From: Mizuhopecten yessoensis
Lineage: Eukaryota
Assembly (NCBI RefSeq): GCF_002113885.1
Contig: NW_018408827.1
Location: 1 to 64,000 of the forward strand
Direction: 5' to 3'
DNA: 64,000 bases
The position numbers and the translations under genes were made by a program. This document shows positions 26,801 to 64,000 of this stretch, in pieces (within the stretch, counting starts at the first letter, position 1; each line of letters starts with the position of its first letter). A model generated the notes under the pieces. The model was given only the letters and a program-made list of their open reading frames with translations, was not told where the DNA came from and did not search any database.

Positions 26801-29714
26801 AAATTCTTGATCCTCCTTATACAAACTCTAGATAGACTGGCACTAGCGAACATTGAACAGCGGTCCCACTAATCTCATGGACACCACAGACGCAAGACAA
26901 TTACGCGTCATTTGTCATCTCCGTGGCCTACAGATGTTGCTAAAAGACCAGCGGATGATGGCTGTCTTGGGGACATTGGTATAAATAAAAAATGAAAAAT
27001 AAAATAAAAACAGTTCCGACATAATTTGATATATTAAAGTATCTGTTTTTACTTCAATAAAGCATACAAACGTCGAGAAATGTTTAAGACATGTGCGGAA
27101 AAAGTTAAAAGGAAATAGTTGTGAAAGAACACAGACCCATTTTAGTATACCTATAGCGGTTACACTAGTTTCAAAGGGCCAAATGGGCCACTTTACAGCC
27201 ATCGATTTAGACAATATTTTGAATTATCAGGAATTTCTTTTTCCTGTTCTGTCTATTACCATATTGGTCTTATCACCACTATGTAGAAATTCGCCACCAT
27301 CCGGCAGGTCACGGTATCAAAAAGCCACAAGGCCGTCGGTAACTTAGTGTTTGAATAAAAAAAATAATAGAAGTTTGCACAGAAAAGCAATCAATATCTC
27401 AGAGCGTTGTTTTTTTTTTTTTTTTTTTGCTCAAATGGAAATTTAATTCACAAATACAGGCAAAACGGTTGCATTGATAAAGAATGTGGTGCACATGCCA
27501 TATTTAACTATCCTAGTGTAAAGCTATATAGTTTTTACGGCCGATCACATCCTGCAGTATTTTATGTGAACATGCCAGCGCTATCACGCAAACCCGTAGA
27601 AGTCGTTCTGCCTTAATCGTTGACAGGCATGGAATCGCATGCAGGTTCTGGAACGCAGACATTCCAAAGATAGAACCATTGTATCGCTATTACTTGACAG
27701 CATGACGCGACGTCGCCACGAGTGGGTTGTACTTACTGGGGTGAAACCTATTTGACCTTTTGTGTCAAAACTCAAGGACACCCTCGGGTGGCCGGTGTAG
27801 ACAGAAGCTTCGGTCATCCGAGAGTTTTATTGAGAACGTTTTCTGGTAGAAAATGTTCGCCCCGTGGCCCGGTATTCTGTGTAGTCAGGGCGTGCTGTGT
27901 ACCTCCGGACGTCGGGTGTATTTATAGATGAGGGACTGTTGACTTTCGATAATGTTTCAATGTAATTTGTTTAGTATAGGTTTGAAGTTTCTGTTGATAT
28001 CAAAAGACATCAGTTCATAGATACTAATATTAAGTATTATAAATGTTTTTGCATTTTGTCCGAGTCTGAGTTTTTGTTGGTTAGGGGCTTAAAGTCTTCA
28101 GAAAGCTAAGGCCATATCAAAACGGAATCTGATCCTGAAAAATATATAATGTTTTAGACAAACAACTGCTTCATGCATTTGGTTAAAATTCACTGAGATA
28201 AAATGAAATATATAGTTATGTTACCTAACAGCTTTCTGTCTAGGGGAGTCAGTGGTGCCCAACGTTACAATTATAAAGTCAACAATTGGGTCGTGGCATT
28301 CATAGCTAGCATAAATGCCATCTGACTGTGTTGGAGCTTTATAAGTATATAATTCAGCCCATATCTATATAAAACGAGACTAGTGGCCCAGAATGTCCCA
28401 GTTTTGTAGGCTTTCGTAATGCAGACATAGGACGCCAGTCTTTCGCAAGACTTCACTTCCAAATAGTCTTTTACTCGCTATGCTGCCATGTAGAGTAAAG
28501 TGAATGGTGTGTACGACTGTGGGAATCGAACTCTTAATTGTCTTGTTAGCAGTAGATGCTGCCGCCGAAAGACGGTGATGGTCCAGGTGCGGGAATTGTG
28601 TATGCTTAGCTCTGAGCATATGTCTCATAATTTACTTACTGATTTATTTGTCAGTTATTACGTTTTTATAAGACTACCCTCCTCATCTCCAAGGAAATTT
28701 CAAAAATGCAATTTTCTGAAATTCTAGGTTATTTTGAATTTGCTGGTTGATTGAATGTTGGCGGTTGGGGATTTCAGAAAAGGTCAGGTTCTACTGACGG
28801 TATAATTGACAAAGGAATTATATTAATTAGGTAGATAGGGGTATGATTAATATCATAGCCTTTCTTATTTTAACAATCCACATAATTTATCAATCCGTCG
28901 TGGCAGGAATATTTATTGTCATATTTAAAAAGACGTATATAGATAATGTCTTTCTGCAGGGTTGTAAATAATCGTGTCCTTTGTTAAAGGCCATTAAATC
29001 ATACTCGCTTGTAAGGATGATGACAATGGATGTTAAGGTTTTAACTTTGTCCGATAAAAGAGAAACAAATTTATGGATATCAACCCAGTGCCGAAAGTAA
29101 CGAGGAACATTGAGCCGTTGACCTTATAAATGAGGTAGATAATTATTGACATTAACCTCGTGTAACGTGCTAGAGGCTGTCTCCTTTTTGGGTCATTCTG
29201 ACCTAGTTATCGAGATTTAAGACAACACGGATTTTGTTTACATTATAGCTAGGGTTAGCTATATTTGTAGCTCCTAATTACACAGGATAGATTCAGGATG
29301 ATTATTACAATAACATTTTAAAAGTATTGTTAGCTTATACATTCATTTTCAAGATATAAGAATATCAAATTGTTCCACTTTTCAGAAAAGTGTTGAAATA
29401 TTCTCACCAAATCTTCTTATAATTAATCTTATTGATTTATCACACGCGGTGTTTTTTATCTTACCCAGATTATTGTCAAATATCCGGCGAAAAACTTAAC
29501 ATGGGTTTTTTGGTCAAGTTGATAAAGTCTTAGAAACACCAATTTGTTCTGTCTAGACCCAGAGCAGTCGTCACCATAGGTCGGACTACCTTAGTATATA
29601 AATACGTATAGAAACAAGTAATATTGCTAGTGTAGATGTATGGTTATTTAGACCAAGTAAATGAGTCTGTCGTGGGTCGTTATATTCATATTACAAATGT
29701 ACTATCGTGACTGT

Positions 29715-55442: not shown

Positions 55443-56015
55443 GTAATCGTATGTATACATGTCTGTGCGTACATTAGTGTACAGTAATCGTATGTATACA
55501 TGTATGGGCTACATTAGCGTACAGTAATCGTATGTATACATGTCTGTGCGTACATTAGTGTACAGTAATCGTATGTATACATGTCTGTGCGTACATTAGT
55601 GTATAGTAATCGTATGTATACATGTCTGGGCGTACATTAGTGTACAGTAATCGTATGTATACATGTCTGTGCGTACATTAGTGTACAGTAATCGTATGTA
55701 TACATGTCTGTGCGTACATTAGTGTACAGTAATCGTATGTATACATGTATGGGCCACATTAGCGTACAGTAATCGTATGTATACATGTCTGGGCGTACAT
55801 TTGTGTATAGTAATCGTATGTATACATGTCTGGGCGTACATTAGTGAACAGTAATCGTATGTATACATGCCTGGGCGTACATTAGTGTACAGTAATCGTA
55901 TGTATGCATGTCTGGGCGTACATTAGTGTACAGTAATCGTATGTATACATGTATGGGCCACATTAGCGTACAGTAATCGTATGTATACATGTCTGGGCGT
56001 ACATTAGTGTACAGT
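55443..56015. repeat. 41-bp minisatellite, ~14 copies
   Basis: GTAATCGTATGTATACATGTCTG(T/G)GCGTACATTAGTGTACA; contains the palindrome ATGTATACAT. Confidence 0.97.
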
Positions 56016-56243
56016 ATTAGCCGTAGTTGCGTTAATCACAGGCGTGAGGTCGCACCTAAACAAAACACACACAAAAAATAAGAACTTGAGCAAGGCAAAT
56101 GCATATGGTTATATTATTGCAAAATGTCAAAAATACATCTGTGTGTATATATATAGTAAATACATTCTCATTTGAAAACAAAATTAAGAATTTGCAAAGT
56201 AAATTTCAACAAATTAAATGCACAAAATTTGTTAAGATTTCTT

Positions 56244-56303
56244 CAACAAGTTCAGTCACGGTTACTTGTTACCAATTTATAACCATGACGTCATAAGCTT
56301 GAT
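56244..56303 (-). promoter_or_regulatory. Type II SECIS element in the GPx 3' UTR
   Basis: Minus strand: CAAGCUU-AUGAC-GUCAUGGUUA-U-AAA-UUG(GUAA)CAA-G-UAACCGUGAC-UGAA-CUUG. AUGA/GA quartet, 10-bp helix II with one G-U pair, unpaired AAA, apical mini-stem and helix I. Lies ~620 nt after the stop. Confidence 0.92.
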
Positions 56304-56915
56304 TTGTTAACAACGTAAAATGCATTGTTTGAATCGGCATATTAGATGATCCGGATTTTTTCTGGAAATGAATCCTGACTAGGAATTTTCATTGTACCTA
56401 TACATGTAATGTCTTATTGTTTTAACCATAATGTACAATACATAATAAAAATTGAATAGCTGTGATTAGAACTTGTCTTTCTTTCAAATAAAATTCAGTT
56501 AATATTTCAATCCAATCGGGTTCTTCAACCGTTTAGTTAGAATTCACGTTATACATCAATCTAATGTCTCTCAGTTATAAGTGCCACCTCGTCTAACGCC
56601 AACAATTGCGGTTTTCAAATTTCTTTCGACATATTGTCAAATCCCTTTATAACGCCTAAATTAAGACGATTTGTAAAGGTGTCAGTGTAAAAAAATAAAA
56701 TCTGTCATGTATATATTTTCAATTAATTTCATTATTGCGAAGAACTTCATAAACAAACAATTAAAATACTGAAAAATCTGACAGAAGCTTCATTACAATC
56801 GAATTGAAATTAAATTGTATAAATTTGGATTCAAAAACACTTAACTTTCTCAAATTTTACACCCAAATATCGTATACTTCTTCACGATATATTTAATCAT
56901 ATATGCGACCTTAAA

Positions 56916-57203
56916 TTATACCATAGTGAATTTAAGTTCAATTGCATCAAATGTTTCTTCGATAATTTTCACGATATTGCTAGCTGTAGTCGGGTTATTG
57001 GCCGAATCTTCCAATGTCATGGATACCAGGATATTCTCGATATCGTCTGGGGCTACAGCGGATAGTATCCGATATCTTGGCATCCCGTACTTGTCTACAA
57101 TAAACTTCTCAAAGTTCCACACGACATCTGATGGACGGATTGGGTCCCAGAAACTCCGCCGTACCCTGAATGCTGCATTGTCCGGGAGACGGGGACAGGA
57201 GTT
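56916..57203 (-). CDS. GPx: Selenium-dependent glutathione peroxidase, exon 3
   Basis: Acceptor TTTATAG|AAC (phase 0). NSCPRLPD...[28 protein letters not shown]...; stop TAA at 56916. Confidence 0.95.
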
Positions 57204-57556
57204 CTATAAATATAAAGCAGTACCTGTTAACTCGAACTAGAATTTAATCGATTTCCCTCCATAATGTATATCGGAAGAGTCGACCAATCTTTCTCCCTCG
57301 AACTTGGAAGAATCAAATAGCGCGTTTCTTTATTCTACTTTCAAGAAGATGCATGTCACAGTTTTATGTAGTAGACCCTACGTGTAACTTTTTTCCAAAC
57401 CAATTTAGAATTCATCCCTTCTAGTTGACTATTACATACATATAGGATTTGTTNCCACCCCAATTCTTCCCTCCCTCCCTCCCTCCTTCCCTCGGCCTCC
57501 TCCAAGCATACACGCATACACATGTAATACATGCACTACATTTCAAATGAACTTAC

Positions 57557-57798
57557 TTTTAAATAAGTGTAGAAGTGGTCCTCCTGCGGCCCGTTTACAT
57601 TTACTTTCGCCATAAGGTCAAACAATGGAATATAACCACTTCCGGGTCGAACATAATGAAGTCCGTTCAGAAGCTCTGTCTTATTATCGGCGGGTTCCTG
57701 GAGGGCGAACTGGTTGCATGGAAATCCGACGAAAGAAATAGATCTGTTCTCGTGTTTCTTTAGTAGTGCATTTATTTGTCGGTACTGGTACGTGAAAC
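57557..57798 (-). CDS. GPx: Selenium-dependent glutathione peroxidase, exon 2
   Basis: Acceptor TTTTTAG|GT (phase 1), donor AAA|GTAAGT. FTYQY...VGFPCNQFALQEP...LHYVRPGSGYIP...KVNVNG...FYTYLK. Confidence 0.96.
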
Positions 57799-60700
57799 CT
57801 AAAAATAAATACAAAACTTAAACTGATAGGTAACTTGTACGTTTTACACCTAGATCATTAAGTTATGAACCATGTAATATACAAGTAACCATATCGATTC
57901 ACGTTCACGTAACTACACGTGTTCCATAGAAAAGGAACAAGTCTATGATAGTACTTGTCACATGCGTCACAGTTTTTTTCTCTAACCGGTTATTCTCGTT
58001 TTTGCTGGGGAAAGAGTAACGTTACTACTATCTTCACGGTGTGAGAAATCTGCAACCCGAGAGCTAGAAAAACTAAATAATCAACCCAAACGACGGAGAC
58101 TGCTCTGTTACGCCCTTAACGTTAGGAAAAACAATTCTCCTATTATTCCAATTACATGTTTGAAAATATTTTTTCAGCATTTATAATATTTTATCTTGAT
58201 TTGCACATGGCTTCTTCCGTCGAGAGCTGTTTGTGACGTCATACACGTTTTTTCCCCTGATGTCATCGTCTTGTGTCTGCTCACGTGTTATCTGTCATAT
58301 TTCAGAGGGTTTCAGGCAACATACTAGTTGAGCTGATAGAAGAATCATGAACAGGTTAGCAAAGAGAGATAATTCTGAGAATAACAGGAGAAAAACCTGT
58401 CTTCACCCGCCAAGGAAAGAGCTAACACGTGCAATTATTCTGTAAACGTCACCATTAGGCCTAACTAATCATGTATGCAGTGTAAGCGTCTTCAATTTTG
58501 TCACACAATTAATGCGCATTTGAAGATGTCGCTGCGCATTGGTTTCGTCATTATTTTACGAAATGAATAAGGGAGAGTAAAAAAAATAATCACCCTGCTA
58601 TGATATCGACAGAGAAGTCTAAGCCCATAGGATAAGATTTTTGAAGTTAAGTACTGCTAAATAAAAAATAAAAATTGTGTTGGGATGTCTCTATCTGCAC
58701 CATGTCGGAGTGATAGCTTCTATTGCTTTTAACTGCTGTATAGACATAAGGAACATCACAATACATTCTAAACGCCTGGGGTTAGATTTGAACAGCCGTG
58801 AACCTGTACGTGTAACCTACAAACATACACACACCAGTTAAGTTTACTTCAGACCTTCATTGTACATAAACAATCATTCACATTTAACCTAACAATTGCA
58901 GTTTACCTTTATGCATGTTTACACATGCCTCTCTATCATTATGTCAAGCCCCTCTGTCATATACATGTACACAAGCCGTTATTGTCGAGGACAACAAGTC
59001 AAACCAGAAAATGCATAGCTACAAATACACAGCTGTATTTAAATGTATGTGACTGTGTCAAGTTGTAATATAGTTGAATAAATAGTTGAAGAAGGGATTG
59101 CGCTTACAAGGTTTCTCGAGTTTTTCAAGGGCCTCAACTCCATTTTTTTTAAATTGTTACTTGTTCTTGTTAACTATACAAATGTGCGATAGAATACATG
59201 TGTGGGAGTCACGCCGACAAGGTTTTGTACAGGAAGGGCGAATACAACCCAATCCGCCGAACTCTCAAATTCCCAAATTTCCCAACACGCCCTAACCCCA
59301 ACTAATACCGCTACTTCAACCTCCCTGCTGTACTCGTTTGTGTGTGTATAGGGGGAGGTTACATATGTACAACAAATATAGGAAATACTCAGACAACATT
59401 CGAAAACAACATACTGCAAGTGTGTGCTACGCGATAATTACATATACTGTATGATACGCACATTATAAAGTTATTACAGAAAAACGGCATTAATCATTAA
59501 CAATTTAGATAATTAAACGTTGGTGGTAGCAAATAATAGTTGTTTACATAGTAATTTATGCATTAATTCCAGATTTACTGACATGTACAGAACATGTATT
59601 ATAACTGGGCCCGTGTGTAATTCTATGTACGAGATGTACTAAACGTCCCGTACTCGTAGCCATACTGCAAACACAGTTACATTGTTTATCTATAAATCCT
59701 GTCCAGACAACCTCATACCGGAAATAATTGTCTCCTAAAGTAGCAATTTGGTTCGATAATCGGTGCTCAAATGTTTAGCCAGACCAATGTAACAGAGGTC
59801 TTTGTGCGTGTTTTTGGTGTTTTTTTTCATTGCCACCACTTTGGATGAAACTGGGACCTTTGGTTTACTAGTCTGACTCTCTGTATACAAATAACCTAAT
59901 CCAACTTGCTATAATATTGCACAAGCACTCTGAGGCTAACAAGAAGTACCTAAAGCGATTTAATTCCACTAAGAATATTTGGTAAACCTTCTTTTTTTTT
60001 TTAAATCTTTCACGTCTGAAACAGTATCCTTATATACTCTTTAAAAGCTCAAAATTCATTTCAGAGCTTCTAGAATTCATATTGGTTGTACTGATTACTA
60101 TTGATGAAAATGTATGCACCCTGCCTGGTGTTCTGGGTAATTTTACACATTTTAGGGGTTTTGATCAACTTTCGGTTAAAATGCCACCTCCAATTATCGT
60201 ACATATGATCGTTGGGGGTGGAATTTTGACCAAAATTTGATCTCTTCCACTAAAAACATGTAAAATTGCTCTGAACACCTTAGTTTAGGTCCAGATAAAG
60301 CTGTAACATATTCTCAGATCCCTTTGGGTCGTACTACAGTAAGACATTTCAGCTTGGACGCACTTCAACGCATCCTTAGAAAATATGTACAATCTCAACA
60401 AGCAAAGGACGCCCTAACAACAGCTTCCTGTACTGCCACAGGACACACATGTATAACAGTCAAAGTATGTTGACTTCAGGCGCAATATGTCACATACCAA
60501 CAAATAAATAACCGACAGAGTGACGCAAATCTGGAAGCTTACGTCATGAGTCGAGTTCGACAGAAGGAGGAATCTTAACATGAATCATAATAGACCACTC
60601 TGACGTCAGAACTCCAGGGACCTGAACATCGATTGCATGGTGTATATTTCGACCAATACATATTTTAAGGGAGTATTATTATACGTTGGAGGGGTTACAT

Positions 60701-61559
60701 AAAATCATCACACAGTAAACAAAATTATAATGATATCGTTGAAGAGATGGATAAATATTGTTTCAGTAACCTACTATCCACTTGAAATGTGTATGATCCC
60801 CTTGTTCTCCCAAAACACGCGCCATTTAGATAGTTTAAACTTGTGTAAGCTACAGTATAGTGCCGCATTTGGTCTGAAATACTTTCATCTCAATATTTTG
60901 ACTAACCATTTGCAAGAGAGGCATTGTCTTTCAGTCTTCTGCTTGAGCAACGGTGCTTTTGGTTTGTCCAACCACAGAGGGAAAACATTTCAAAGTATTG
61001 CCAGCACGAGCAGGACACAAGTATACCTATTAAATAATTCATATGTTGACACACGATGATAAAATTGACAGTTTCAGCTTATACGGAAAGCAAAATGAAA
61101 GACAACACGAAATGGGGAGACACAATCTTAAACCACAAGTCATTGTGAACTTCCACAAAAAAATCTGGCTTATATAAACAGATGTTCCTTAATAGAGCGA
61201 CAATATTTCAAAATTTGCAACGCCAAGTTGTGTACGGTCAACCGTGGTAATCCAGCCATCTTTGAAAGTTTTCCCACCACAGGTAAATGGATATAGCTAA
61301 AGTAAGAATACTGGGAAAGGAAAGTTTAGAAAAAAGCAATATGGAATCTAAAACACAGACAGTGCGTGGGCAACCGCGGGTTAGTAGCTGCTCAATTAAC
61401 CGACTGAGGGTTCTAAAGTAAAATATGAATGAAATAGTAAAAGTAAAAAAATAACTGTGTTAGTTTAATTAGATCTATGTCATATTAAACATTTAAACTA
61501 CAGTTCCTTCATAGTCAAGTCAAAAGTTAAACTAACATATATTAAATACAAACACCTAC

Positions 61560-61767
61560 CTCAGAAGGTTGCTACGTTCACAATTACTACGACCTCGTCT
61601 TGAAAATCCGACATATATTTACGATTCCCGTCCAAATCGGTGACGTTGTATGCATACATGTTACCATGTCCCCCCTCACATTTTCTATACACGGTCTGTC
61701 CTCCCACAGCCAAAAGGAGCGATAGCGCTACCAAAGCAGGGGATACTGTCACGATGTCCAGTCTCAT
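61560..61767 (-). CDS. GPx: Selenium-dependent glutathione peroxidase, exon 1 (signal peptide; Sec UGA at 61563-61561)
   Basis: CCGCCATG start; hydrophobic leader; VVVIVNVATF-TGA-G|GTAGGT. Splicing restores NVATF-U-G-FT. Total 738 nt = 245 aa; GPx3-like secreted type. Confidence 0.95.
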
Positions 61768-61798
61768 GGCGGATTGTTACAGCCGGCTAAGCCCTCAC

Positions 61799-61808
61799 TA
61801 TTTATATA
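61799..61808 (-). promoter_or_regulatory. TATA box of GPx
   Basis: TATATAAATA starting 41 nt upstream of the ATG. Confidence 0.7.
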
Positions 61809-61833
61809 GAACATATTCAAAGCAAAGCGCAAT

Positions 61834-61873
61834 CGGTCAAAGGTCAAGGGTCAAATTACAGGGTTAAAGGTAA
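61834..61873 (+). promoter_or_regulatory. Cluster of DR1 nuclear-receptor half-sites in the GPx proximal promoter
   Basis: CGGTCA-A-AGGTCA-A-GGGTCA, then GGGTTA-A-AGGTAA. Confidence 0.6.
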
Positions 61874-64000
61874 GGCCTTGCGTTTGTTTTGTACGTAAAT
61901 ATTTATTATACATTACGAAAGAAAGGTTAGCATGTTTACGATTTTACAAATCCTATATTGTTCATGCATTGTAAAAAGTGCAATATGGTATCTTATCTGA
62001 GCCGGAAATATATACAACAACTGTTGATCATCAATGAAATGAAACTTATGACATTAGCTAGGCACTAAATTTTTAGGGACGACAGACGTCGCCTAAGGCT
62101 CACATGTCATCGAATGGACGTGGAAAACAGCCATGTAAACAGTTTACATAAAGGTCTCATGATCACCTCAGTAAAACAACCATATTTCAGACGCATTTCA
62201 CGTGTTCATCGGTTTTTGTCAGGACGAAAATTGCGTGTATATATTTAATACAACAACATTCAAAGTCTTTGTGATTGTTAAATATAAAAATAACAAACAA
62301 AGCGTTTCTAAGTAGCTCGCTCTAGCGCGTTCGCCTCTCTAGAGGTCTACCAGGGGCTTATTTTATTTATTGTTTTGTAATATCCATTAACATATCATTT
62401 GCCATTCGTCAGATCTCTAGTTTGATGATAGACGTCCTACAAAGACACGAGTCATTTGTAAACCGATAATGATCCTTCACTCGACACGTCACCAAAGTTT
62501 TGGTAGAACGAAGTCCCACAACCCCTGAGTGTTGTTCATCATGTCTGTTTTTCTTTTTTACTCTCGAAAGTCTATTTTCAAGAATACGAAAAATGCTGAT
62601 ATTCATTTTCTTTTTTCTAAAAGTACCTGAAGAAATGAAAATTATGAACTCCAGTTAGATAAACGTGACAACAATAGTCAACCTAAATGGAACCTCTCAG
62701 TATTTTTTGTATATTTTTTTTTTGAAATGTAACTGTTTCTTCATAAGTAAGTTATGCAGAGAAAAACAATGTTTATGAGCTGCAGCTAAAAAATATCTAT
62801 TTTGGAAAGCGAGTCGATCGTGAATTACATGTGGACATCTCATGAATACATTTTAGGTTTAACAATCTATTTACATAACTATATTTATATGTTTTTTTCA
62901 AAATGACAATAAAAAGATATTTAAAACTAAAACAAAAAACCCAGGGGCGATAGCTCACCTAAACCACCAATCTGACGACAAAAATAACTAATGAGCATGA
63001 TACTAGTTCAATCAAAGAAGTATCGGTGTTTAACAGATTGCAATATAGTAAGGCAAAAGTCTCCCTCTTCCTCGGTTGTGAAAACGCATATCGTGGTGGA
63101 TATATCTTAAGAAATGGGCTGTGCATAAATACGATTTCGTATTTAAGTTGATATCTTTCCTCATTTGAGTATGTTTCAATAATCCAGCCAGATTTACATG
63201 TTATCTTTTAACATCTTTGTGCTACTTTATACCATCTACCGGTAACATGATACATTCATTGTCATGTGTGGTCAATATATGAGAACACTCAAGAAGAAGT
63301 TGAGAACGACTTGAGAAGAACTTGAGAAGAACTTGGGAACGGATTTTCCAATTTCCTTGCATTTTGACACGTACTTTCTTAACACGAACTTCAGCTCGCG
63401 CCCGGTGATGTCTTAAACCGGAAATAGTATCCATACAATTTTAAATGTACCGAAGGTATCCGCGTAAGAAAATAGTCCCTCATAAACAAATCAAATTAAA
63501 GTTACGAAAACATATTGTGATGATTGCAACACCACTTTAAAAGAAAATGTGCAAATAGAGAAGCCAGTGACGATGATATTGTTTTGAAAAATATTTTTTT
63601 TCTACATAGTTTTATGGTTCATGGTATCTATATGCGCAAATGTTTTTGTTTGTTTACGTTTGTCACCGACCGAGTGTTTGCAATCAATGATCATTGATAG
63701 AAGAAGTCTTTTGGAAAATATGGTGTTTAGCTGACTTTTTTAAATGGAGAAATATATAAAGTAAAAGTATATAGATGATAAACAGTTTATCACACAATAT
63801 TTTCAGTGTTTGTCGTTCAAACAATTCCCTCATCACAAACACGTGGATAAAATCGAGAGGCCACCACAGTAAAGGGGTATGTTCTGAAACTTTGTAGAAT
63901 ATTCTTTAAAACAAATATTTTTGGGTTTACTTTATTTGTCTTTAACTCACAAAATTATAATATTTTCGGTAACACCAGATGATACACCATACGTTTTGTA

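What the first reader, a model, noticed from the sequence alone, without database searches (positions are those of the whole stretch)
56244..61767. Complete selenoprotein recoding system: UGA-Sec glutathione peroxidase plus type II SECIS
Seen: three exons join in frame only if the TGA at 61563-61561 is read through. It falls at the GPx active-site position (NVATF-U-G), with the other tetrad residues present (Q in QEP, W and N in WNF), and a canonical SECIS sits in the 3' UTR. Established: a eukaryotic SECIS directs Sec insertion at UGA. The mechanism is known, but automated pipelines often truncate or mis-splice such genes, so this locus may be unannotated or mis-annotated. The signal peptide and PGSGYIP loop point to a secreted, GPx3-like, probably tetrameric enzyme.
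Basis: partly seen in the sequence, partly recalled or inferred. Interest (0 to 1): 0.8.

Follow-up and report, generated by a model that had tools for sequence, protein, structure and literature searches.

The report
Scallop selenocysteine GPx3-like gene, mis-annotated
This is an ordinary, well-expressed scallop gene for a secreted-type glutathione peroxidase whose catalytic selenocysteine is encoded by UGA and served by a SECIS hairpin in the 3' UTR; the published model of the gene (PyGPx3-5) misses the first exon and the selenocysteine.

Summary
A three-exon gene on the minus strand (ATG 61767; exons 61787-61560, 57798-57557, 57203-~56106; stop 56918-56916) encodes a 245-residue GPx3/5/6-like glutathione peroxidase. 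It has an in-frame TGA (61563-61561, residue 69) at the peroxidatic column.

- **Splicing:** public RNA-seq confirms both predicted junctions exactly, with 383 and 202 raw reads plus contigs from two other studies. The TGA is kept and shows no variant.
- **SECIS:** the 3' UTR is transcribed through a hairpin at 56310-56243 with AUGA, an 11-bp helix II, an AAA bulge, a 3-bp mini-stem and GA. Rfam SECIS_1 scores it 25.3 bits, below the gathering score of 35.
- **Genome context:** the genome has a tRNA-Sec, and five other GPx3-type genes carry TGA at the same column.
- **Annotation:** Table 1 of PMC7824116 gives coordinates that identify the genome as Patinopecten yessoensis and this locus as PyGPx3-5 (56916-60988, 203 aa). 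That model starts at an ATG inside a rare cassette exon and lacks exon 1 and the Sec codon.

The mechanism and family are textbook, so interest is low. Sec insertion, secretion and tetramer state are inferred, not shown. The same scan noted other putative selenoprotein genes in this genome; I did not check them.

The parts
61799..61808 (-). TATA-like box (TATATAAATA) upstream of the transcript start
   Evidence: Read directly. It lies about 20 nt upstream of the 5'-most transcribed base seen (61787, X10 contig). Function inferred.
61560..61787 (-). Exon 1: 20-nt 5' UTR, ATG 61767-61765, 68 codons, Sec codon, first base of Gly70
   Evidence: X10 contig is collinear over 61787-61558. Translation. 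Pfam GSHPx profile positions 1-31 match residues 37-67.
61699..61767 (-). Putative signal peptide (residues 1-~23, MRLD + 17-residue hydrophobic core + GGQ)
   Evidence: Kyte-Doolittle 11-residue means reach 2.9 over residues 5-21 and fall below 0 after residue 19. No signal-peptide predictor was available, so this is inferred.
61561..61563 (-). In-frame TGA = selenocysteine codon (residue 69) in NVATF-U-G-FT
   Evidence: Retained in spliced mRNA with no variant at a depth of about 350. It falls in the 3-position gap of the GSHPx profile (positions 32-34 = F, U, G) between the exon 1 and exon 2 matches. Five paralogues have TGA at the same column.
57799..61559 (-). Intron 1 (GT..AG, 3761 nt)
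   Evidence: Joint skipping 3761 nt, CT..AC on the + strand: 383 raw reads in X19 and contigs in X2 and X10.
60907..61026 (-). Minor in-frame cassette exon (120 nt, 40 codons, no stop), containing ATG 60988, the start of the published 203-aa model
   Evidence: Joints 61026^61560 side (6 reads) and 57798^60907 side (10 reads) in X19, against 383 reads for the main junction. Translation. Arithmetic: 82+242+285 nt = 203 codons, which matches PMC7824116 Table 1.
57557..57798 (-). Exon 2: GPx core with FPCNQF, catalytic Gln (LQEP, Q103) and the RPGSGYIP oligomerisation-type loop
   Evidence: Pfam GSHPx 72.4 bits, E 2.7e-20, profile positions 35-108. Best PDB matches are GPx5, GPx3 and GPx6, E 4e-19 to 4e-17, against about 1e-4 for GPx4.
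57204..57556 (-). Intron 2 (GT..AG, 353 nt; contains a single N at 57454)
   Evidence: Joint skipping 353 nt: 202 raw reads in X19 and contigs in X2 and X10.
56916..57203 (-). Exon 3 coding part: 95 codons with WNFEKF (W179, N180), then TAA 56918-56916
   Evidence: Translation. PDB GPx6, GPx3 and GPx5 match residues 1-46, E about 1e-5.
56106..56915 (-). 3' UTR (about 810 nt), transcribed through the SECIS
   Evidence: Contigs X10 (56106-57203) and X2 (56130-57203) are collinear with 0 mismatches. X19 raw depth is about 50 over 56247-56443. The poly(A) site was not determined.
56243..56310 (-). SECIS element: helix I 56310-56304/56249-56243; AUGA 56294-56291; helix II 56289-56279/56265-56255 (11 bp); AAA 56278-56276; mini-stem 56275-56273/56268-56266 with GUAA loop; GA 56253-56252
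   Evidence: The MFE fold gives helix I, helix II, the AAA bulge and the mini-stem, z = -2.4. Rfam SECIS_1 covers the full model 1-64 at 25.3 bits, E 0.0036 in a 161-nt search, with AUGA, AAA and UGA aligned. It is the only strict-pattern hit in the window.

Best explanation
The locus is an expressed three-exon gene of the Yesso scallop for a 245-residue glutathione peroxidase of the GPx3/5/6 type. During translation the UGA at codon 69 is read as selenocysteine. A kink-turn SECIS hairpin about 1.15 kb downstream in the 3' UTR would recruit SBP2, eEFSec and Sec-tRNA(Sec) to the ribosome. Sec69, together with Gln103, Trp179 and Asn180, forms the peroxidatic tetrad that reduces hydroperoxides. 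A cleavable N-terminal signal peptide probably sends the enzyme into the secretory pathway. Shown here: the sequence features, both splice junctions, retention of the UGA, transcription of the SECIS, a tRNA-Sec gene in the genome, and a conserved TGA in paralogues. Inferred: Sec insertion itself, SECIS function, secretion and oligomeric state.
For: Exon translations and frame arithmetic. Pfam GSHPx matches on exons 1 and 2 are collinear, leaving exactly three profile positions for F-U-G. Best solved-structure relatives are GPx5, GPx3 and GPx6, and the RPGSGYIP loop aligns to their RPGGGF/YVP. WNFEKF aligns to GPx3 and GPx6. RNA-seq gives 383 and 202 junction reads, spliced contigs of 1548-1568 nt in two further studies, no variant at the TGA, and a 3' UTR contiguous to about 56106. 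SECIS evidence comes from the fold, the Rfam SECIS_1 full-length alignment at 25.3 bits and a unique strict-pattern hit. A tRNA-Sec scores 77.3 bits with anticodon TCA. TGA sits at the same column in five other GPx3-type genes of this genome, four of which, like PyGPx1, have a SECIS-like hairpin downstream. The literature classes this locus as a Se-GPx of the mollusc GPx3 clade, with highest expression in larvae (PMC7824116).
Against: The SECIS_1 score is below Rfam's gathering score (25.3 against 35) and was filtered out in a 7.5-kb search. There is no protein-level evidence for Sec. In X19 the 3' UTR depth (about 30-110) is several-fold lower than the coding depth (about 350), so some transcripts may end before the SECIS; polymorphism or AT bias could explain this equally well. 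Many X19 fragment ends pile up at 61760 and 61752, just downstream of the ATG, so the 5' end, and with it the signal peptide, is not firmly fixed in all transcripts. No cross-species orthologue could be compared.
Confidence: 0.92

Rival explanations
1. The published model is the real product: translation starts at ATG 60988 and gives a 203-residue GPx-like protein without Sec or Cys at the active site (PyGPx3-5 as in PMC7824116).
For: Table 1 of PMC7824116 lists 56916-60988, 2 introns, 203 aa. The cassette exon 61026-60907 exists in a few reads and is open in frame.
Against: The cassette is an internal exon, joined upstream to exon 1 in 6 reads, and is used in about 3% of junction reads (10 and 6 against 383). 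A protein starting there would lack GSHPx profile positions 1-34, including the peroxidatic residue. In the main mRNA, ATG 60988 is intronic.
Confidence: 0.02
2. The TGA is a genuine stop: the gene is a decaying pseudogene, or encodes only a 68-residue peptide, and the downstream GPx frame is a relic.
For: TGA is normally a stop. The SECIS is below Rfam's curated threshold. No protein evidence exists.
Against: The downstream frame stays open and GPx-like across two introns (E 2.7e-20). The mRNA is abundant although the UGA would be a premature stop in exon 1 of 3. A complete SECIS architecture sits in the transcribed 3' UTR. Five diverged paralogues keep TGA at this column, and the genome has a tRNA-Sec.
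Confidence: 0.04
3. The TGA is an assembly or sequencing error for a Cys codon (TGT/TGC), so this is a Cys-GPx.
For: Cys-GPx homologues are common; a single-base error could create a TGA.
Against: Independent RNA-seq runs from four studies show the reference base at a depth of about 350, with no alternative letter listed at 61561-61563. Paralogues also carry TGA.
Confidence: 0.01

Closest known systems
Vertebrate plasma glutathione peroxidase GPx3 (with GPx5/GPx6), e.g. PDB 2r37, 2i3y, 7fc2
   Same: Best sequence matches for exons 2 and 3. Same NVA-x-x-U-G-x-T, FPCNQF-x-x-QEP and WNFEKF motifs. The RPGxGxxP loop typical of the tetrameric GPx1/2/3/5/6 group is present. Hydrophobic N-terminus as in secreted GPx3. 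Sec encoded by UGA with a 3' UTR SECIS (established knowledge for GPX3).
   Different: An invertebrate lineage-specific paralogue, not an orthologue of a single vertebrate gene. It has three exons, with the intron directly after the U-G codon pair. The C-terminal tail is about 17 residues longer than the solved GPx3 chain. There are three N-glycosylation sequons. Oligomeric state and substrate are untested.
PyGPx3-5 of Patinopecten yessoensis as published (PMC7824116, Table 1)
   Same: Same locus: the published coordinates 56916-60988 coincide with the window's stop codon and with ATG 60988. Exons 2 and 3 are identical. It is classed there as a Se-GPx of the mollusc GPx3 clade.
   Different: The published model has 203 aa and starts in a rarely used cassette exon. 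It lacks exon 1 (signal peptide, first strand of the GPx domain), the Sec codon and any mention of a SECIS. The RNA-supported model has 245 aa with U69.
Rfam RF00031 SECIS_1 (eukaryotic SECIS, form with mini-stem)
   Same: Full-length alignment to all 64 model positions with AUGA, 12 nt to AAA, mini-stem and UGA in register.
   Different: Scores 25.3 bits, under the gathering score of 35. The mini-stem is only 3 bp, so the type II call is a prediction. The quartet flank is U·A rather than the more usual U·U.

Membership tests
Glutathione peroxidase (Pfam PF00255 GSHPx) | GSHPx domain match above the curated threshold | tested here: met
   Exon 2 alone scores 72.4 bits (cut-off 27), covering profile positions 35-108. 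Exon 1 adds positions 1-31 at 17.1 bits.
Glutathione peroxidase (Pfam PF00255 GSHPx) | Catalytic tetrad: Sec/Cys, Gln, Trp, Asn at the conserved columns | tested here: met
   The TGA lies in the F-U-G gap of the profile. Gln in LQEP aligns to KQEP of GPx3/5/6. WNF is present in the segment that matches GPx3/GPx6.
Eukaryotic selenoprotein gene | In-frame UGA retained in the mature mRNA | tested here: met
   Junction 61560^57798 has 383 reads and spliced contigs. No variant or alternative splice removes the TGA.
Eukaryotic selenoprotein gene | SECIS element in the transcribed 3' UTR (AUGA, unpaired AA, GA, helix II of suitable length) | tested here: inconclusive
   All structural features are present and transcribed, but the Rfam score of 25.3 is below the gathering score of 35. 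SECISearch3 was not available.
Eukaryotic selenoprotein gene | Sec decoding machinery in the genome | tested here: met
   tRNA-Sec at 77.3 bits (cut-off 47), anticodon TCA by ARAGORN. SBP2 and eEFSec were not searched.
Eukaryotic selenoprotein gene | Selenocysteine actually incorporated in the protein | not testable with these tools
   Needs 75Se labelling, mass spectrometry or ribosome profiling.
GPx3/5/6-type extracellular tetrameric GPx | Closest similarity to GPx3/5/6 and presence of the oligomerisation loop absent from GPx4/7/8 | tested here: met
   E 4e-19 to 4e-17 for GPx5/3/6 against about 1e-4 for GPx4. The loop RPGSGYIPLF aligns without a gap to RPGGGFVPNF.
GPx3/5/6-type extracellular tetrameric GPx | Cleavable signal peptide and secretion; tetramer formation | tested here: inconclusive
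   The hydropathy profile is typical of a signal peptide, but no predictor and no experiment were available. Many X19 fragment ends lie downstream of the ATG. The tetramer is not testable here.

The most novel reading that the evidence does not exclude
The minor features are regulated isoforms rather than noise. One is a 120-nt in-frame cassette exon that would insert 40 residues directly after Sec69-Gly70. The other is transcript 5' ends at 61760/61752 that would remove the AUG and the signal peptide. Together they would give an insert-bearing or intracellular Sec-GPx from the same gene.
Probability: 0.06. Interest if true: 0.35.

Novelty: already known. Interest (0 to 1): 0.22.

Why it matters
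The biology is textbook: UGA/SECIS recoding in a GPx. The practical value is a correction. The published scallop GPx catalogue (PMC7824116) lists this gene, and by the same coordinate logic its GPx3 paralogues, as N-terminally truncated models. These models lack the very selenocysteine that defines them as Se-GPx. That affects protein lengths, pI and mass values, domain positions, alignments and trees built from them. It is also a clean, RNA-supported example of how annotation pipelines route around Sec codons, here by adopting a rare cassette exon as a false first exon.

Tried and rejected
1. An Rfam scan of 7.5 kb at E<=1 found no SECIS. A 161-nt scan recovered SECIS_1 at 25.3 bits, so the first blank was a filter and E-value effect.
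2. Rfam scans of three paralogue 3' regions found no SECIS_1. My permissive pattern scan found SECIS-like hairpins in five of seven GPx 3' regions, this gene included, against a background of 7 per 128 kb.
3. The 30 nt at the 5' end of the X2 contig that do not match the window map to an exon of an unrelated gene on C3225 and C77118. I treated this as a chimeric contig, not as an upstream exon.
4. The ubiquitin 'hits' of exon 3 in the PDB search are sums of nine non-significant repeats (each i-Evalue about 1e3), so they are spurious.
5. The mir-297, mir-466 and mir-3149 hits at 55469-56012 are far below their thresholds and reflect a tandem repeat.
6. Shan et al. 2011 (PubMed 21276866), an earlier scallop Se-GPx cDNA, is not held in the library. 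I could not tell whether that cDNA is this gene.
No search or fold of the full 245-residue model was run. The large protein searches were not used, because the family was not in doubt and their length window cannot reach full-length relatives from single exons.
Full report
**What is in the sequence**

On the minus strand an ATG at 61767 opens a 68-codon frame. It reads MRLD, then a 17-residue hydrophobic stretch, and ends ...VVVIVNVATF. A TGA follows at 61563-61561, then one G and a GTAGGT donor.

After an AG at 57800-57799, exon 2 (57798-57557) completes a GGT codon. It reads FTYQY...GFPCNQFALQEP...YVRPGSGYIPLF...YLK up to a GTAAGT donor. Exon 3 starts at 57203 in phase 0, contains [20 protein letters not shown], and ends at TAA 56918-56916. 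This stop is one base off my first reading of the ruler.

The coding lengths are 208 + 242 + 285 nt = 245 codons. The frame closes only if the TGA is decoded. I searched each exon by reference and never joined them; no search or fold of the joined protein was run.

**Family**

- Exon 2 alone matches Pfam GSHPx at 72.4 bits (profile positions 35-108).
- Exon 1 residues 37-67 match profile positions 1-31.
- The three missing profile positions correspond one-to-one to F68, the TGA and G70. The stop therefore sits at the peroxidatic Sec/Cys column.
- Among solved structures, exon 2 is closest to GPx5, GPx3 and GPx6 (E 4e-19 to 4e-17), then GPx2 and GPx1. GPx4 is far behind at about 1e-4.
- The RPGSGYIPLF segment aligns without a gap to RPGGGFVPNF of the tetrameric enzymes.
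- Exon 3 matches GPx6, GPx3 and GPx5 over its first 46 residues. The higher-ranked ubiquitin rows in that search are sums of non-significant repeats.
- In full-length numbering the tetrad is U69, Q103, W179 and N180.
- Residues 5-21 form a hydrophobic core typical of a signal peptide. There are three N-x-S/T sequons. Secretion is an inference.

**Transcript evidence**

Runs of the same species were found and four were laid on 56050-61950.

| Feature | Raw RNA-seq run X19 | Other runs |
|---|---|---|
| Joint 57798^61560 | 183+200 reads | In spliced contigs of X2 (1548 nt) and X10 (1568 nt) |
| Joint 57203^57557 | 104+98 reads | In the same two contigs |
| TGA 61561-61563 | No alternative letter at a depth of about 350 | - |

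- Both joints show GT..AG ends.
- X2 and X10 come from two other studies. Their contigs carry both joints and run collinearly through the 3' UTR to 56130 and 56106.
- The X10 contig reaches 61787, 20 nt upstream of the ATG. A TATATAAATA box lies at 61808-61799.

**SECIS**

The minimum-free-energy fold of 56316-56236 (z = -2.4) has these parts:

- a 7-bp helix I (56310-56304 with 56249-56243);
- an internal loop holding AUGA (56294-56291) and GA (56253-56252);
- a perfect 11-bp helix II (56289-56279 with 56265-56255);
- an unpaired AAA (56278-56276);
- a 3-bp mini-stem closed by GUAA.

Rfam SECIS_1 aligns over all 64 model positions with AUGA, AAA and UGA in register. It scores 25.3 bits, E 0.0036 for a 161-nt search of all 4227 families. 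That is below the gathering score of 35, and a 7.5-kb search did not report it.

A strict pattern of my own (ATGA, 9-14 nt helix II with at least 8 pairs, AA, GA) hits only this site in both strands of the window. Shuffles give about 0.9 hits per 128 kb, so a hit inside this 0.8-kb UTR on the right strand has a chance of about 0.006.

The element lies about 1.15 kb after the UGA, about 605 nt after the stop codon, and more than 110 nt before the transcript end. The type II call rests on a 3-bp mini-stem and is a prediction.

**Genome context**

- The assembly (987.6 Mb, 82,659 contigs) contains a tRNA-Sec at 77.3 bits with anticodon TCA.
- Five further GPx3-type genes have TGA at the same column, in N[VG]ATY-TGA-G. 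They are one on C1459, three on C3722 and one on C4792.
- Most of them, and PyGPx1 on C3892, have an ATGA..AA..GA hairpin 290-440 nt after WNF. The scanner background is about 0.14 per region.
- Retention of TGA across paralogues that differ at about half of their residues argues for a decoded codon.

**Identity and annotation status**

PMC7824116 catalogues GPx genes of two scallops. Its Table 1 lists PyGPx3-5 at 10997.2:56916-60988, with 2 introns and 203 aa.

- 56916 is the last base of the stop codon found here.
- 60988 is an ATG inside a 120-nt exon (61026-60907). In X19 this exon is spliced between exons 1 and 2 in only 6 and 10 reads.
- The arithmetic 82 + 242 + 285 nt = 203 codons reproduces the published length exactly.
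- The coordinates of the other PyGPx genes match my paralogue hits on C1459, C3722, C4792 and C3892. The genome is therefore Patinopecten (Mizuhopecten) yessoensis, and window coordinates equal scaffold coordinates.
- The published model avoids the TGA by starting in a rare cassette exon. It lacks the signal peptide, the first 34 positions of the GPx domain and the catalytic residue.
- The published PyGPx3-1 to -4 models likewise begin downstream of their TGAs.
- The paper still calls these genes Se-GPx, by homology.
- An earlier scallop Se-GPx cDNA paper (PubMed 21276866) is not held. I cannot say whether it describes this gene.

**Caveats**

- In X19 the depth over the 3' UTR is uneven and three- to ten-fold below the coding depth. 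Small pile-ups of fragment ends occur at 56905 and 56845. No poly(A) loose ends or canonical signals are seen there. Polymorphism, AT bias and alternative 3' ends are all possible.
- X19 fragment ends also pile up at 61760 (48 molecules) and 61752 (25), just downstream of the ATG. This could be a library artefact at the 5' end or additional start sites.
- The X2 contig diverges at 61761 into 30 nt that belong to an unrelated gene. I regard it as chimeric.
- None of these points touches the Sec codon or the junctions.

**Verdict**

The thing itself is a standard Sec-GPx with a standard SECIS, in a gene already named in the literature. The new content is a corrected gene model, so interest is low.

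Two unchecked first-reader notes from this scan (selenoprotein L and a Sec-MsrA on other pieces of the same genome) are consistent with a Sec-using genome. I did not test them.

Noticed in passing
G000:C1459:315755-315775 (-); C3722:20599-20619 (+); C3722:19630-19650 (-); C4792:20740-20760 (+): Four other GPx3-type genes carry TGA at the same active-site column (NVATY-TGA-G). The published PyGPx3-1 to -4 models (PMC7824116 Table 1) start just downstream of these TGAs, so they look truncated at Sec in the same way.
   Followed up: partly
L018:4588-4812 (-) = G000:C3722 ~28587-28811; WNF at 27616-27624: A third GPx3-like gene on C3722 (NGATY-TGA-G, PCNQF, WNFEKF) has a SECIS-like hairpin at 27275. 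It lies at none of the coordinates listed for P. yessoensis in PMC7824116, so it may be an uncatalogued sixth GPx3 paralogue.
   Followed up: partly
window 60907-61026 (-): A 120-nt in-frame cassette exon is used in about 3% of junction reads. It would insert 40 residues right after Sec-Gly. It contains the ATG taken as the start codon by the published model.
   Followed up: yes
window 61752-61760 (-): RNA-seq fragment ends pile up at 61760 (48 molecules) and 61752 (25), 7-15 nt downstream of the ATG. These may be additional transcript starts that would remove the signal peptide, or a 5'-end library artefact. Unresolved.
   Followed up: partly
window 55469-56012 (+): Tandem repeat with a period of about 82 nt, just downstream of the gene's 3' end. 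It gives sub-threshold mir-297, mir-466 and mir-3149 hits. A similar repeat lies at L015 9300-9820, next to the C4792 GPx3 gene.
   Followed up: no
window 60253-60297 (intron 1): A short piece is covered by separate high-depth contigs and reads whose flanks do not match the window (G>A at 60268). It looks like a fragment of a dispersed repeat that is expressed elsewhere.
   Followed up: no
L007:1470-1720 (G000:C3225) and L008 (C77118): Two near-identical copies of an exon of an unrelated gene. The 30-nt chimeric 5' tail of the X2 contig maps to this exon.
   Followed up: partly
window 56561: C>A difference in 31 of 78 X19 reads in the 3' UTR, outside the SECIS. Probably a heterozygous SNP.
   Followed up: no
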